Of a DNA stretch of 64,000 bases, positions 36,063-42,000 are shown piece after piece. Every line of letters starts with the position of its first letter. Position 1 is the first letter of the stretch. Below the pieces are notes generated by a model, which made no database searches, had not been told where the DNA came from, and saw nothing but the letters and a program-made list of their open reading frames with translations. The position numbers and the translations under genes are program-made. The stretch is from Styela clava (taxonomy: Eukaryota), in the NCBI RefSeq assembly GCF_964204865.1, contig NC_135253.1:3782001-3846000 (forward strand). Reading direction: 5' to 3'.

Positions 36063-39000
36063 CTGTGAATTCGGGTCAATTAGAGAAAATAGTTGGAAAA
36101 ACAGAATGGAGTAGAACGAAAGGTAGAAATGTTATATATTGGTAAGGAAAATAAATAACAATCTCAACCTGTGACTGGGAGGCAAGTTTTTTTTTATTAC
36201 ACTTAGCATCTCTCTATGACATATTATACCACTGGTTAAATGCCAGGCATATACTATCATAAAGAAACCAGTGAAGCAGTAATATCAAAATAAGTGCTTG
36301 CTTTGTATGACTTTGCATAGAAAACAAAATAAATCACAATTATTCCCTCCACCTGTTGAGATTGTTATGTTTGATGATCATAGCACTGTTGTAAGCAAGT
36401 ACAATATATTCTTGCTAGATATCCATGCATAAATTTATTGCAATTGTGACGGAATAAGCATAAAAGCATGATACACATGACATATTATTATCTGTTTACA
36501 GCACATGCTAAGGCAGACTTACAATCAATACATTAAGCTTAGGAACAAATGAAAGAATATAATCAAGCGTAATACAAAAAGACTAGCAACTAGTTCGAAA
36601 CAAACAATGTATATGAATTTATACATGAAATGAATCGCCATGAGACAGGATATGTCATACAGCAGAAGTAAATTTGAAGAATGGCGCTTGTCTATAAGCT
36701 TTAAGAGTCCAAATTCCTGGCAAAATTTGTGGTTCGTTCATAATGTTTTTCATAAAACAAACCAACTGAAAGCATACAGTCTGTAGTGATATCAGTGCAA
36801 GAATATTCATGGGTAGGGCAGTACTTCTAAACTGGATACCACAGTATAGCCATAAAAATGTAAGGCCAAAATATTAAGCATATCTTGTAGCATAAGAGTA
36901 TACACCCTAAATGAAAGAGTGTAGTCTAAAAGTCTAGATGAGAAATTGTAGGATATCAGTAAGTGATAGTATTTGTTGCTGAGAAAATGGGATTCATTTA
37001 TTAACAACTATGAAGAAAACATGCTTTCAATCACCAATCATGCATAGAAGTATACAAGCAATTTAGTGCAATACTTTGATCATAAATATTTGATTTTTTC
37101 ATAGGGATCCAAAACGCATTTCACAAAATTAAAAAAAGAAAATACATACCGGTAAGTGTTTTTTAAATATTCAACATTATCTCAGCATAGTAAGTGATAA
37201 AATAAATCAAAATTTCATACATATTCAATTTTGATAATAGTTTTCCATTTCTCTGATTTTTAAGCATTAAAACATGATATTACAAAAACTTGATAGTTGA
37301 TACTAAAAAGAATTTTTGTTATGGGTTTTTTAATGCTAATTCATAAGAGAGAGAGCTGTGAAAACGACGGAAGCCTCATGAAACAAATAGAATCATACAA
37401 TCCAACAACTATTTTTCAAGTTGATCACAGGAAATATAAACTGACATCAGAAATATAGTAACCAGACTGTCAATTTATTGATAATGTGAAATTGCAAAAA
37501 AGTATTCTTTTTATAAATTCTAATATGATGATCGTATAAATTTGCAAAAGCAACATTTTTCACAAACTTGACTAAAATATTCTAATAACTAATTTTCTCA
37601 TTACAGACAGCACAGGACAAATCATAATGCAGAAGTGAGAAATTTGATTGATGGTAAGCTTTATTCTAGCTTTGTTATTGGCTTGAAGAGTTTGAGAAGT
37701 ATTAGAGAGTAGACACCATTAGGTAGGAAAAGAGAGAGAGTGATCTGAGCAGAATCAGTTGTGTGAGCCGTGTTGCGTCAAGCAAATACGTTCCGGCACA
37801 GCAAAACACCATTCATACCCGTAATTCGACCAAGGACGAATCCATGACGTCTGGTCCCAAGTGGTACACATGATTAAAGTTGGATGGGGTTGAAATCAAG
37901 TCATGGGTGTGCGACTGCGGCGGAGGCTGACAGACAAAGGGAAAAACGAATGAATTGAGAAGCAAAGATCAAGCTTGGCCTTGATTATACCATACTTGAC
38001 AAAAGATATTTTTGAGTCAACATTGATGAATTGTGGGAAATATCGATTACCCATAATTCAACACACAAGAGAATTTAAATTCAAAAGACCATAATGCAAT
38101 TATACAAAATAATATATGTTACACATGAATTATTTTGATGAGCTAGAAGCAGTGATGACCAAAATCAAAAATATACTACTCCAAATACATTGCTTTAAAA
38201 AATAGTTTCCTGAATCTAGAATATTAGTGAAACTTATATAGAGACCCATGAGACGATTATATAACTTGAATTAATTTGATAGTATTTCCGTATTCATGTT
38301 TTGGCCATCTCTGCTTTGTAGAATAAAAAGTACCAAACATATAGATATTATCATATCATATCCAACGAAAAACAGACATGTTTAGGAATGGTTGGATTAT
38401 GACTAACGATAATCTTTAACAAACATTTCAGCCCTTGGTAAAAATCATGCTTTATTAGACAAATGTATTGTACATTAACGAATGTATGTCCTTCTGGCAG
38501 GCAATACTACAATGATAATTTGCAATCAGGTGTATTTATTAAAAAAAGATTGAAAAAACTGAAAATACAAAATGACTGTAGCAAGTAGAAGACCAGTTAT
38601 GTCAATCCCGTTGTATTGGAAATACAATGTACTATATACAACTGTCAAGCGATAATATATGCAATTTTAAGTAGTACTGTTTTACATGAACAATGAATTT
38701 CCAGGGGTTGTGGAATCTGAATTTGAGTCTAGCAAACTCAAGTGTCCATAACGGACAATTAAAGAAGACCTGCACACACATCTAAGATAATATGGCCAAA
38801 ACTTGATTTCCCTGCTTTGAACTGAAATTTCATTCAATCTGACGTAAACAGCAAGACGTAAACCAAAAGTCTGAGCCATTTTTAATATCGTCTGGTACAA
38901 ATTTCCTCGACTCTGCAGCCCAGTTCAGCAATTCGAAAACTTCAAATTTTTTACTTCAGATTGTTGGCACAAAAACTTTAAGGCAGCCATACATAACTAG

Positions 39001-42000
39001 TCAAACTAAGTCAAAATTGTGTCAGCCAGAAGTCAGAGCCAATTTTTAAATAGCTCGGGAGTATGGTGCCAATTTCCCCGCCTCCGCAGCCCTGGTCTTG
39101 TCTGTTCAGCATTTTGAAAACGCATATATTTTCTTTAGATTTTATACTTCAGATTGTTAGCACAGACACTTTAAGGCAACCATACACGCATACAGAAATA
39201 ATCTCAATAAGTTATCAACACAAAGTTAAATGAAATCATAAAAATACAATCATGAGAAGGCCTATCAATCCACAAACAGCATTCATGCAATATAACCTAC
39301 CCCAGGTAAATCCTTCAGAATTTGCATTCCATCTCCTGGTCCCATGTGTGCAACATGGTTGAAGTTGGCTGGTGCAGAAATCAGTTGACTTCGACGTTCA
39401 GGATTTTTCAATAACTCACTATATTTTTCAGAGTCAAAATGATGAAAACAATGAAAAAGAGCTTGAAACTATATCTGAATACGTACATGAAGTTGGTATC
39501 TACAGAATGCTTCTTACAAATGAACTTGAAAAGTGCTGGGGAATGCGCAGAGAATTTAAGGTTGGTTTAAAAATTGAATTTTTTTACAGATACCGTACTT
39601 TTTTTAATTTTTGTAGTGACAATATGTATATATATGTCATGATATTTTTGATACTGTCATCTATTTATATTATTCAAATTCAAAATTAAAAAAAAAGGAA
39701 TTTCTGATTAAAAAGCATTTCAAGTATACAAAATTAGCCCTGATGTTTGCATAAATTTATAACAATTTGTAGAAACAAGTATTTGACTAAAATTTCCATG
39801 TTAAAATGGTTATAATGGCCTGATTCGAGAAATATATACAAGTACCAGTTTAGTACAGTAAGAATGAAATTTATCGTTTTAGTATGGAATTCTAAGTCAT
39901 TGCTTGCAATTATGTATAAGCCAAATGAGACGAAAACTCCACATTTGATATTGAAATTTCCCCAGGAATAATTCCAGGGAAATAGACTTACTTAACAACC
40001 AACTTATTCACATGTTTTGTTTTCTAGTTTGGTTGTCAAGAATCTTGACTCAAGATTATTCATGATAGTAAGTAAGTTTTTCTACTTAAAAACACATACT
40101 GTAAGTTAATTTATAATTTTCATTTATTCAAAATGCTACAAACACACAGGTAAATTCTTACGTTCTCAGAGAGCTTCTCAACTCCTCAGGCGGTACCTTG
40201 AATGCAAATCGTCTTTTTGTCTTTCCTTTATAATATTGTCTCTTCCCAACGCTTGTCAACTCAGAAAGTTGAAGCTCGTCACCTTCTGAAATTATAGAAA
40301 ACATTATTTGCCATTCTATAACAGGAAAGATGCAAAATAAAAACATACAAAGACAAAAAAGAGAAACAAGAGAGTAATGCTCAAATATACGGACATTAGG
40401 GTCAAATGTCAAATAAAAGTATTTCCACAAATCAAAATAAAACAGCAAAATTATTGATGAAATATCAAGTCCTATACGAGACAGAATTTTAGAAAATATA
40501 CAAAAGTAATAGCTTTTGAGCAGCTTCAAGTTCAGAAAATTTGAAAACAGTTGATTCATTAGTGATTTTTTATCAGCAACCATTCCGTGAAAAAACATCT
40601 AGACATGTACACGTAGTGTCCAACAAATAAAAATGCATTTTCTCAAACTTTGAATGATCTGTTAAAGGATGCACATCTAATTTGGATTACACAAGATTCA
40701 TGTAAACTATTATATTTGTAGGTTCCCAAAATAAATTACCTAATATATTTGATAGTATGATTTCAAGTGGTGAGCAAACACAAATCCCTGTAATTGACAG
40801 GATGTAAATCTTGATTCATATCCTGGGATGCAATTACAGCCGACATGCCACGAACACCACTTTAATTGGTGCGCAACATACATACCGTCATATTTATTTT
40901 TCATATACACAAGTTTAGGTGGATCCATAGAACAAGCAAGATTGAGTGCTCCATCTCTTGATAGCGGACGAACTTTTTTAAGTGGAATTGTTTGCAGCCA
41001 TTCCATTTCCAAGATATCGAAAACATCGACTGCATTCTCGGAATAAACAATCAAGTATGGTGCATTGTATGCTATAAGGAAATGAATAAAGTAAAGATGT
41101 TATATAGAAATTGAGAATATATATTTGTGCACGAAGTTAGAGATGTCAAAAATGAATTGGATATTCGAATACATTTGAAATTGATGATTTTTGACATAGT
41201 GAATATGACTTTTCGAACAATAAAGGATATTCCATTTAAAGCATTTGAAATCAAATGGTTATATATAAAATAGAATTTGTTCAATTTCTGAGACTGCGAT
41301 AAATATTTAAACAATTATTACCAAATTCAATTTCCAGCAATTTACAATGATTTTTGCAAATTTCTCTGTTGAACATCAGCAAATTTAAAATATTTAATAT
41401 TTGGAGATCAGAATGTATTCTAATTGTAAGATATTCGATTTGAACCATATATGCAGCATATATTTCATAGTTGTTAAAATAATCCTAACTGATCGGACAT
41501 TATAATAAATATCTGAAATATGGTCTATTTTTGGTGGAATTTATGGTAATAATATACTTCCTTATTTTTCTTGCAACTCACAGAGATTAAAACAGGGTCA
41601 AAATCCTATTCTTATTACTTACTTATAGCAGATGGTGGAGCAGGCCACATTAACTCCAGTTGTCTTGATCTCCTGCCTTGCCAGTCAGTATAAACCCCAC
41701 AAGCTATGGAACAAAGAGGTTGAAAAAAATCATTTGAAACAATAAAATATCACTGTCGAAATGATAATTAAATTGTTCTTAGAAGACAGAATGTTTGAAG
41801 AATATAGCTTTGAATGCAAGTAAAATTCTAAAATATTCAATATTCAAAAACATCATTTTTCAGAAATTTATGTATTGAATATGATTGTAGCATATGGTGT
41901 TGTAACACCAATTCATTTATCTAAAAAATAGAATTGAAATTTAATGAAATACCAGATATATAGCATGCTGCATCATTAGACCATCTTGCTAATAGAATTG

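What the first reader, a model, noticed from the sequence alone, without database searches (positions are those of the whole stretch)
37819..39418. Tandem second CRIB exon in an invertebrate MRCK
Seen: about 1.4 kb downstream of the canonical CRIB exon is a 108-nt phase 0-0 exon with good splice sites. It encodes [14 protein letters not shown], a full CRIB consensus (ISxPxxFxHxxHxG), and it is missing from the ORF track. Skipping it keeps the frame. The downstream intron carries TGCATG motifs (plus-strand catgca at ~36425 and ~37039). Established: TGCATG is the Rbfox site, and from memory a second alternatively spliced CRIB exon that raises Rac binding has been reported for human CDC42BPA. Inference: a splicing switch for Cdc42/Rac selectivity that either predates vertebrates or arose convergently.
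Basis: partly seen in the sequence, partly recalled or inferred. Interest (0 to 1): 0.75.

Follow-up and report, generated by a model that had tools for sequence, protein, structure and literature searches.

The report
Second CRIB cassette exon in MRCK
A small optional exon in a sea-squirt-like animal's MRCK kinase gene adds a second docking motif for Cdc42/Rac-type switches, is really spliced into RNA, and sits where lancelet and vertebrate MRCK alpha carry a similar optional exon, so it is probably old rather than a new invention.

Summary
On the minus strand, 37926-37819 is a 108-nt phase 0-0 exon with AG/GT sites that encodes a full CRIB consensus, 1374 nt downstream of the canonical CRIB exon of an MRCK/CDC42BP gene. 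Contigs of three RNA-like runs from three studies join 39301 to 37926. One run also joins 37819 to the next exon. A DNA-like run shows no joints. The skipping junction was not seen directly because a CAA/CAG repeat was masked. It is inferred from depth and from contigs that end at 39301.

A second CRIB cassette at the same position, right after "QILKDLPx", is already annotated in amphioxus and in fish and mammal MRCK alpha isoforms. All 54 such second CRIBs, and ours, have Tyr or Phe before the second His. None of 193 first CRIBs does. A short tree puts ours beside amphioxus CRIB2 but cannot reject an independent origin. Bivalves have a separate, upstream extra CRIB.

TGCATG is not enriched. 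Cdc42/Rac selectivity is untested.

Verdict: a real exon, probably a chordate-wide cassette, and a new member of a known kind. This scan had not noted it before on other DNA.

The parts
37819..37926 (-). CRIB2 cassette exon, 108 nt, phase 0-0. It encodes [36 protein letters not shown].
   Evidence: Sequence and splice sites. Translation. Pfam PBD at E 9.4e-4. Joint 37926->39301 in X1, X2 and X6, absent in X10, and a loose end at 37819 in X1 that reads into the next exon.
39301..39418 (-). Canonical CRIB1 exon, 118 nt, apparently constitutive. It encodes ...[39 protein letters not shown].
   Evidence: Joints 39418->40162 and 37926->39301. The high-depth contigs of X1 and X6 end at 39301 (table 8).
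37927..39300 (-). Intron of 1374 nt between the CRIB1 and CRIB2 exons (GT..AG). It holds a tandem pair of elements about 150-175 nt long.
   Evidence: The joint skips 1374 nt with ends CT..AC on the plus strand. The repeat pair is 39010-39185 / 38850-39000, 81% column identity.
36063..37818 (-). Intron of 1756 nt downstream of CRIB2. The donor is GTATGA, and reading through it gives Val then a stop.
   Evidence: It is covered at low depth in the RNA-like runs, and contigs of X2 (37503-37926) and X6 (37387-37927) run from the exon into it.
35932..36062 (-). Next exon, 131 nt. It starts with a CAA/CAG (poly-Gln) run: [23 protein letters not shown]...
   Evidence: Joint 35388->35932 in X1, X2 and X6. 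The 28-letter loose end of X1 at 37819 matches the start of this exon with one CAA fewer.
35274..35388 (-). Following Ser/His-rich C-terminal exon.
   Evidence: Joint 35388->35932 and loose ends at 35274 in X1, X2 and X6. Sequence.
40162..40285 (-). Exon upstream of CRIB1 (...[18 protein letters not shown]).
   Evidence: Joints 39418->40162 and 40285->40886. Translation.
37851..37898 (.). 48-nt core of CRIB2, a direct repeat of the CRIB1 core at 39336-39383 (77% identical). This is the trace of an exon duplication.
   Evidence: the repeat finder family D1. DNA alignment. The peptides share 12 of 16 residues, E 4e-9.
37039..37044 (-). TGCATG in the downstream intron, about 775 nt from the CRIB2 donor. 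A second site is at 36424-36429 and a third at 39284-39289, just past the CRIB1 donor.
   Evidence: 37 sites in the window against 44.8 expected, so no enrichment.

Best explanation
The window carries most of an MRCK/CDC42BP-type kinase gene on the minus strand: kinase, coiled coil, C1, PH, CNH, CRIB, then a Ser/Gln-rich tail. The 108-nt exon at 37926-37819 is a genuine, in-frame cassette exon.

When included, it puts a second complete CRIB motif 20 residues after the end of the first, between '...QILKDLPG' and the poly-Gln tail. It most likely arose by tandem duplication of the CRIB exon before the chordate lineages split. That makes it the counterpart of the optional second-CRIB cassette annotated in amphioxus and vertebrate MRCK alpha.

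Shown here:
- the exon, its frame and its motif;
- its splicing to the exon on each side;
- a cassette at the same position in other chordates, with a shared aromatic residue.

Inferred:
- the exon is skipped in most transcripts;
- common descent with the other chordate cassettes;
- the extra CRIB gives the kinase a second, differently tuned docking site for GTP-bound Cdc42/Rac-family proteins, changing avidity or partner choice, and hence membrane recruitment, rather than catalytic activity.
For: Exon anatomy and motif:
- Sequence, translation and motif.
- CRIB pattern: 2 matches in the window against 0 in 300 shuffles.
- Pfam PBD: E 9.4e-4.

Splicing:
- Joint 37926->39301 with GT..AG ends in X1 (depth 55), X2 (6.3) and X6 (20.9), from three studies. 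It is absent from the evenly covered DNA-like X10.
- The X1 loose end at 37819 continues into the poly-Gln exon.
- Neighbouring joints have depth 87-151.
- The high-depth CRIB1 contigs of X1 and X6 stop at 39301, as expected at a splicing branch.

Other chordates:
- 54 of the 120 listed relatives have two CRIBs, with the second inserted directly after QILKDLP[VM]. Seven are amphioxus isoforms and the rest are fish and carnivore MRCK alpha.
- The residue before the second His is Y or F in 54 of 54 second CRIBs and in 0 of 193 first CRIBs. Ours is Y.
- Ours is sister to amphioxus CRIB2 in the tree at 76/87.5.

Age of the duplication:
- Only 7 of 12 shared-residue codons are identical between the two exons, read by eye from the alignment. 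This fits an old rather than a recent duplication.

Organism:
- A chordate (tunicate) fits the earlier notes and a GH6 hit in the window's own genome.
Against: - The skipping junction 39301->36062 was not seen, because the repeat at 36029-36071 was masked. 'Alternative' therefore rests on contig depths, which the tool calls a poor measure.
- None of the runs is on record as RNA.
- In X2 and X6 the exon-bearing contig (the junction contig itself in X2) runs on into the downstream intron, so in those runs full splicing of the inclusion form is not shown.
- AU tests do not reject an own-lineage duplication (p 0.247).
- A tandem exon copy lands next to its parent by necessity, so a shared position is weak evidence of common descent.
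- Annotated isoforms of hemichordates, a starfish and cnidarians have one CRIB. No other tunicate could be examined.
- GTPase binding was not tested. Matches to solved CRIB chains are weak (best E 0.41).
Confidence: 0.72

Rival explanations
1. Convergent origin. The CRIB exon was duplicated separately in the tunicate lineage, and again in amphioxus and in vertebrates, and each copy came to lie in the downstream intron by chance.
For: - The tree with ours c1+c2 held together is not rejected (lnL 6.17 lower, p-AU 0.247).
- The core peptide is as close to its own CRIB1 (12 of 16) as to amphioxus CRIB2 (12 of 16, counted by eye).
- The two cores are still 77% identical at the DNA level.
- Bivalves show that MRCK CRIB exons do duplicate independently. 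Their extra CRIB lies upstream and nests within the bivalve CRIBs at 99/93.
- The intron after the CRIB exon holds other lineage-specific cassettes in hemichordates and in B. lanceolatum.
Against: - Position, downstream order and an in-frame optional insert are shared by all three chordate groups (optional use in amphioxus and vertebrates is inferred from annotated isoforms).
- The aromatic residue before the second His occurs in 54 of 54 second CRIBs plus ours, and in 0 of 193 first CRIBs.
- The lead-in is poor in basic residues and holds His in ours, amphioxus and mammals, and in some fish.
- The best tree pairs ours with amphioxus CRIB2.
Confidence: 0.22
2. The exon mainly marks an alternative end of the protein, or a detained intron. 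Transcripts that include CRIB2 keep the downstream intron and terminate one codon later (…VELRV-stop). That would give a tail-less MRCK or a nuclear-retained or NMD-targeted RNA rather than an internal tandem-CRIB isoform.
For: - The X2 contig covers 37503-37926 and joins to CRIB1. The X6 contig covers 37387-37927 and runs from the exon into the intron (table 8).
- The two introns flanking CRIB2 are covered at depth about 2-10 in most bins of the RNA-like runs (X2 has some empty bins there). The neighbouring intron 39434-40024 reads 0 in X1 and X6, and 0 in X2 except for one bin at about 2 (table 2).
- The donor GTATGA is only moderate, and reading through it gives Val then TGA.
Against: - X1 holds the exon joined on both sides, with the junction contig at depth 55.
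- Intron coverage runs the whole 1756 nt with no visible end point, as for unspliced precursor rather than a defined 3' end.
- Contigs cannot show RNA ends.
Confidence: 0.15
3. Rbfox-type control. Inclusion is driven by UGCAUG sites in the downstream intron.
For: Two minus-strand TGCATG sites lie in the downstream intron, and one lies 12-17 nt past the CRIB1 donor.
Against: - There are 37 sites in the window against 44.8 +/- 6.5 expected, and 89 of 100 shuffles reach 37.
- The downstream sites are about 775 and 1390 nt from the donor.
- No conservation could be tested.
Confidence: 0.08
4. Splicing noise. The exon is a decaying exon copy that is included at a low level and has no function.
For: The junction contig has lower depth than its neighbours. 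The exon is not found as a short protein in the collection or in metagenome contigs.
Against: - The open frame is intact and all eight consensus positions are kept.
- The junction is seen in three studies.
- No variant is listed inside the exon, against 9 listed in 37502-37786 of the adjacent intron. This comes, table 3, where 92 rows were not shown, so the point is weak.
- Counterparts exist in other chordates.
Confidence: 0.05

Closest known systems
Vertebrate MRCK alpha (CDC42BPA) isoforms with a second CRIB cassette. These are RefSeq/UniProt models of fish and carnivores, e.g. P0221 and P0200. The human case is recalled from Tan et al. 2003, Gene 304:107, which was not read.
   Same: - An optional in-frame insert directly after '...GPGDGIQILKDLPM'.
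- It carries LIS[ST]P..F.H[VI]YH, with Tyr before the second His.
- The lead-in is rich in Pro (and in His in mammals) rather than uniformly basic.
   Different: - The vertebrate insert is 61-62 aa against 36 aa here.
- It has lost the Gly of H-x-G (HMTV), whereas ours keeps HLGP.
- It has Glu where ours has Asn (FEH against FNH).
Amphioxus MRCK alpha-like isoforms with two CRIBs (P0165-P0167, P0169-P0171, P0178).
   Same: - A short cassette of 33 aa at the same place (KDLPV|SSKHELISAPTNFNHVFHVGPGEGLDDLTDFPV|TVQP).
- A full consensus including H-V-G-P.
- An aromatic residue before the second His.
- It is the nearest row to ours in the tree.
   Different: - Phe instead of Tyr.
- ISAP instead of ISTP.
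- 46% identity over 35 columns.
Extra-CRIB isoforms of bivalve MRCK (7 of 8 Mya arenaria isoforms; Ruditapes philippinarum X1 and X3).
   Same: A tandem second CRIB supplied by a 28-aa optional insert in an invertebrate MRCK.
   Different: - The extra motif lies upstream of the constitutive one.
- It has no aromatic residue (HISH, HIAH).
- It nests among the bivalve CRIBs in the tree at 99/93, so it is a separate duplication.
CRIB/PBD motifs of PAK, N-WASP and ACK with solved GTPase complexes (for example 1ees, 1e0a, 2qme, 2ov2, 8s5t).
   Same: The same I-S-x-P-x-x-F-x-H-x-x-H-x-G core. These chains make up six of the eight weak PDB matches, including the best one.
   Different: - The matches are weak (E 0.41-1.3).
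- The MRCK motifs lack the longer PBD that follows in PAK.
- No MRCK CRIB structure was among the matches.

Membership tests
CRIB / P21-Rho-binding motif (Pfam PF00786) | Consensus I-S-x-P-x(2-4)-F-x-H-x-x-H-[VILM]-G. | tested here: met
   [14 protein letters not shown] matches every fixed position. The pattern occurs 2 times in the window and 0 times in 300 shuffles.
CRIB / P21-Rho-binding motif (Pfam PF00786) | Profile score over Pfam's curated cut-off. | tested here: inconclusive
   19.9 bits and E 9.4e-4 against a cut-off of 21.3. The undoubted CRIB1 of the same gene scores lower, at 18.7 bits.
CRIB / P21-Rho-binding motif (Pfam PF00786) | Binds GTP-loaded Cdc42 and/or Rac. | not testable with these tools
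   This needs a pull-down or ITC assay. Matches to solved CRIB-GTPase complexes are only weak.
MRCK / CDC42BP kinase gene | Order of kinase, coiled coil, C1, PH, CNH and CRIB on one strand. | tested here: met
   Stop-free segments of the minus strand. tblastn of full-length MRCKs gives 12-20 collinear-looking HSPs at 50-57% identity; the order was listed for P0006 only. Hits of the PH/CNH exon carry the name MRCK.
Chordate MRCK alpha second-CRIB cassette | Lies in the intron directly after the exon that ends ...QILKDLPx, downstream of CRIB1. | tested here: met
   Ours reads KDLPG|CRIB2. Amphioxus reads KDLPV| and vertebrates KDLPM|. For the others the intron position is inferred from isoform differences, not from their DNA.
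Chordate MRCK alpha second-CRIB cassette | In frame and optional, with both inclusion and skipping forms. | tested here: inconclusive
   Inclusion is shown. The frame is kept either way. The skipping junction was not visible because the repeat was masked, so skipping is inferred from depths and contig ends.
Chordate MRCK alpha second-CRIB cassette | Aromatic residue before the second His, and a non-basic lead-in. | tested here: met
   Ours is HVYH. Y or F occurs in 54 of 54 second CRIBs and 0 of 193 first CRIBs. The lead-in holds 0-2 K/R residues, against 1-3 in first CRIBs. These counts are of sequences, not of independent events.
Chordate MRCK alpha second-CRIB cassette | Groups with other CRIB2 sequences in a tree. 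| tested here: inconclusive
   Sister to amphioxus CRIB2 at 76/87.5. All chordate CRIB2 as one clade gives p-AU 0.436. Ours c1+c2 as one clade gives p-AU 0.247. The alignment has only 36 columns.
Rbfox-regulated cassette exon | UGCAUG enriched and/or conserved close to the exon in the flanking intron. | tested here: not met
   37 sites against 44.8 expected in the window. The nearest downstream site is about 775 nt away. Conservation could not be tested.

The most novel reading that the evidence does not exclude
The tandem-CRIB cassette of MRCK is a splicing switch more than 500 million years old. It is kept in all three chordate subphyla (lancelets, tunicates, vertebrates) and was invented a second time in bivalves. 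A single kinase gene has therefore toggled between one-site and two-site reading of Cdc42/Rac-family GTPases since before vertebrates arose. The tunicate and amphioxus copies keep the full H-x-G-P core that the vertebrate copy has lost.
Probability: 0.55. Interest if true: 0.5.

Novelty: new member of a known kind. Interest (0 to 1): 0.36.

Why it matters
MRCK is a main Cdc42 effector for actomyosin contraction. The review whose passages I read says its alternative splicing has never been characterised systematically (PMC3940853).

The second-CRIB cassette is spliced in this invertebrate chordate, and annotated isoforms show it at the same spot in amphioxus, fish and mammals. That points to a conserved and therefore probably functional switch. 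It also offers simple models, ascidian and amphioxus embryos, in which to test what a second CRIB does to GTPase choice and kinase localisation.

The separate upstream duplication in bivalves suggests recurrent selection for two CRIBs. In itself the finding is an orthologue of an annotated exon, not a new mechanism.

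Tried and rejected
Literature. Five searches found no open paper that describes a second CRIB in MRCK. 'Two CRIB' hit only a Dictyostelium gelsolin relative. Tan et al. 2003 and Zhao & Manser 2015 are not held. The claim that the human isoform binds Rac better therefore stays a recollection. I read passages of PMC3940853 and PMC8847673. For the other papers I saw search listings only. No supplements were opened.

Relatives of this species.
- Among the 150 listed 50%-cluster representatives (214 reached E 0.001), none of the 24 proteins of at least 400 aa has two CRIBs: 14 have one and 10 have none.
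- The stop-free 51-aa stretch around the exon found no candidate in the protein collection. Given the length window, this says little.
- The same stretch found no confirmed relative among 590 pattern matches in metagenome contigs.
- This species' own annotated protein never appeared. Only the best 120 of 651 hits were listed, so I cannot say whether the exon is already in its public annotation.
- No other tunicate was examined.

Spliced model. It was searched exon by exon only.

Own genome. Only the exon itself and CRIB1 match the peptide.

Rbfox. No enrichment of the motif.

Recent gene conversion between the two exons. Considered and judged unlikely, because 5 of 12 shared-residue codons differ (read by eye).

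Organism. The name Styela clava comes from earlier notes of this scan. Here it is backed only by a glycoside-hydrolase-6 hit in the window's own genome (35.4 bits). That such a gene marks tunicates among animals is recalled, not tested.

Full report
WHAT IS THERE

The window (64,000 bases, no N, 34% G+C) carries most of an MRCK/CDC42BP-type kinase gene on the minus strand. Stop-free segments give kinase exons from about 63,100 downward, then coiled-coil exons, a C1 exon near 47,285, PH exons near 46,480 and 45,340, and CNH exons from 44,656 to 40,886. Full-length MRCK proteins lay on these by tblastn with 12-20 HSPs at 50-57% identity.

Read on the minus strand:
- The canonical CRIB exon is 39418-39301 (118 nt). 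It encodes [39 protein letters not shown] and ends on a whole codon.
- After a 1374-nt intron comes ...ttccctttgtctgtcag|CCTCCG...TTACGG|gtatga. This is a 108-nt exon (37926-37819) encoding [36 protein letters not shown].
- The next exon (36062-35932) starts on a whole codon with a CAA/CAG run.

IS IT MORE THAN CHANCE?

- The strict CRIB pattern occurs twice in the six-frame translation of the window, in the two exons, and never in 300 shuffles.
- Pfam's PBD profile matches both peptides. CRIB2 (19.9 bits, E 9.4e-4) scores slightly better than the undoubted CRIB1 (18.7 bits). Both are under the 21.3-bit cut-off because the exons hold only the short motif.
- The two cores share 12 of 16 residues (E 4e-9) and a 48-nt direct repeat at 77% identity, the trace of an exon duplication.
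- Five of the twelve shared-residue codons differ at synonymous positions (read by eye). This does not suggest a recent copy or ongoing conversion.
- In the window's own genome (377 Mb, 380 contigs) the peptide matches only itself and CRIB1.

IS IT SPLICED?

The exon's sampled words are held by 13 of 15 listed runs from 4 studies. None of them is on record as RNA.

I laid X1, X2 and X6 (three studies) and X10 on 35100-40999. X10 behaves as DNA, with even depth of about 15-36 in all but one bin (a spike at 40222-40418) and no intron-sized joints. X1, X2 and X6 behave as RNA, with high depth on exons, none or little on introns, and GT..AG joints.

| Joint | X1 depth | X2 depth | X6 depth |
|---|---|---|---|
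| 35388->35932 | 151 | 128 | 96 |
| 39418->40162 | 146 | 137 | 87 |
| 40285->40886 | 146 | not seen | 71 |
| 37926->39301 (CRIB1 to CRIB2) | 55 | 6.3 | 20.9 |

In X1 a 28-letter loose end at 37819 reads the start of the poly-Gln exon with one CAA fewer than the window. In that run the exon is therefore joined on both sides.

The skipping junction 39301->36062 could not be seen because the tool masked the repeat at 36029-36071. It is inferred from two things: the lower depth of the CRIB2 junction contigs, and the high-depth CRIB1 contigs of X1 and X6, which end at 39301 as they would at a branch in the assembly graph. The tool warns that contig depth is a poor measure, so the share of inclusion is not known.

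One complication remains. In X2 and X6 the contig that carries the exon runs on into the downstream intron (37503-37926 and 37387-37927). Both introns around CRIB2 are covered at low depth, while the neighbouring intron 39434-40024 is empty in X1 and X6 and nearly so in X2. Reading through the donor gives Val and then a stop. This looks like slow removal of the flanking introns. A truncated isoform is not excluded.

WHAT IS IT RELATED TO?

The spliced model was searched exon by exon.

The PH/CNH exon (93 aa) found 214 proteins in the 50%-cluster library, of which the best 150 were listed. Of the 24 listed proteins of at least 400 aa, 14 have one CRIB, 10 have none and 0 have two.

Using database proteins as length carriers gave more:
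- The Saccoglossus protein brought 15 proteins. One of them, Mya arenaria isoform X3, has two CRIBs.
- An amphioxus protein, restricted to its CRIB region, brought 651 proteins, of which the best 120 were listed. Of those 120, 54 have two CRIB patterns: 7 amphioxus isoforms from three Branchiostoma records, one unnamed protein, and fish and carnivore MRCK alpha isoforms.

In all of these the second CRIB is an insert directly after the first CRIB exon's end:
- amphioxus: KDLPV|SSKHELISAPTNFNHVFHVGPGEGLDDLTDFPV|TVQP, 33 aa;
- mammals: KDLPM|PGFPYPSPNHHSGLISSPINFEHIYHMTV...|NPRPQES, 62 aa;
- cyprinids: 61 aa.

Ours is KDLPG|36 aa|RQQQ.

One character separates the two classes cleanly. The residue before the second His is Tyr (47) or Phe (7) in 54 of 54 second CRIBs. 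It is A, S, V, T or Q in 193 of 193 first CRIBs. Ours has Ala in CRIB1 and Tyr in CRIB2. These are counts of sequences from three lineages, not independent events.

A 36-column tree places our CRIB2 beside amphioxus CRIB2 at 76/87.5 support. AU tests reject neither one clade of all chordate CRIB2 (p 0.436) nor a clade of our own two CRIBs (p 0.247). Common descent is thus favoured by position, order, cassette nature and the aromatic signature, but it is not proven. A tandem copy lies next to its parent by necessity.

OUTSIDE CHORDATES

- Bivalves have a different arrangement. Seven of 8 Mya isoforms and Ruditapes X1 and X3 carry a 28-aa extra CRIB upstream of the constitutive one. It has no aromatic residue and nests inside the bivalve CRIBs at 99/93. 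This is an independent duplication.
- All annotated isoforms seen for Saccoglossus (2), Ptychodera (4), Glandiceps (3), Patiria (3) and Actinia (2) have one CRIB. So do 14 of 15 members of the Pocillopora/Stylophora cluster; the last is a fragment with none. Absence from annotation is not absence from the genome.
- Hemichordates and B. lanceolatum have other, non-CRIB cassettes at the same junction. This intron is a hotspot for optional exons.

ORGANISM

Earlier notes of this scan name the genome Styela clava. I did not verify the species. A glycoside-hydrolase-6 match in the window's own genome (35.4 bits, none in 14 control genomes) fits a tunicate, if my recollection holds that the tunicate cellulose synthase carries that domain. 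If the organism is a tunicate, the cassette is present in all three chordate subphyla.

REGULATION AND FUNCTION

The motif is not enriched (37 against 44.8 +/- 6.5), and the downstream sites are about 775 and 1390 nt from the donor. A third site lies 12-17 nt past the CRIB1 donor.

Function is inferred only. The motif keeps every consensus residue. Its nearest solved relatives are the N-WASP and PAK CRIBs that bind Cdc42 or Rac, with weak scores (E 0.41-1.3). A second motif 20 residues after the end of the first would most simply add or retune a GTPase docking site.

Of the literature, I saw passages of one review. They say that Rac1 may also bind MRCK alpha, that CDC42-GTP did not raise kinase activity in vitro, and that MRCK splicing has not been characterised systematically (PMC3940853). 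Five searches found no open paper on a second CRIB in MRCK.

VERDICT

- The exon is real, and it most likely corresponds to a cassette already annotated in amphioxus and vertebrates. It is a new member of a known kind, of moderate interest.

NOT DONE

- No other tunicate and no genomic locus of another species could be read.
- This species' own annotation was not seen.
- No supplements were opened.

Noticed in passing
window 36063-37818 and 37927-39300: Both introns flanking the CRIB2 exon are covered at low depth (about 2-10) in most bins of the RNA-like runs. The neighbouring intron 39434-40024 is empty in X1 and X6 and nearly so in X2. X2 and X6 contigs run from the exon into the downstream intron, where the frame stops after one codon. 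This may be detained introns or a truncated isoform.
   Followed up: partly
window 36029-36071: The CAA/CAG (poly-Gln) run at the start of the next exon varies in length. The X1 transcript contig has one CAA fewer than the window.
   Followed up: no
window 39010-39185 and 38850-39000: A tandem pair of elements about 150-175 nt long (81% column identity) lies in the CRIB1-CRIB2 intron. Depth is raised in X1 just downstream, at 38646-38842. This may be a dispersed repeat.
   Followed up: partly
window 39284-39289: A minus-strand TGCATG lies 12-17 nt past the donor of the constitutive CRIB1 exon.
   Followed up: no
proteins P0160, P0282, P0283, P0315-P0321: Bivalve MRCK isoforms (Mya arenaria, Ruditapes philippinarum) carry an optional 28-aa extra CRIB upstream of the constitutive one. 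It appears to be an independent exon duplication.
   Followed up: partly
proteins P0296, P0298, P0335, P0337, P0343: At the same junction after ...KDLPV, hemichordates have a 15-aa acidic non-CRIB cassette (SMTASD[MI]L.DI.EEG). B. lanceolatum has a basic cassette, about 23 aa by eye (RGKRSFKKSTGPGKGSPLLSHH...). This intron seems to collect optional exons.
   Followed up: no
G000:C9:16179895-16180164 (L003): A glycoside-hydrolase-6 domain match (35.4 bits, over the cut-off) in an animal genome, as expected for a tunicate cellulose synthase. The link to tunicates is recalled.
   Followed up: no
window about 1800-3200, minus strand: Stop-free segments with long hydrophobic stretches typical of a reticulon-homology domain lie downstream of the MRCK gene.
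   Followed up: no
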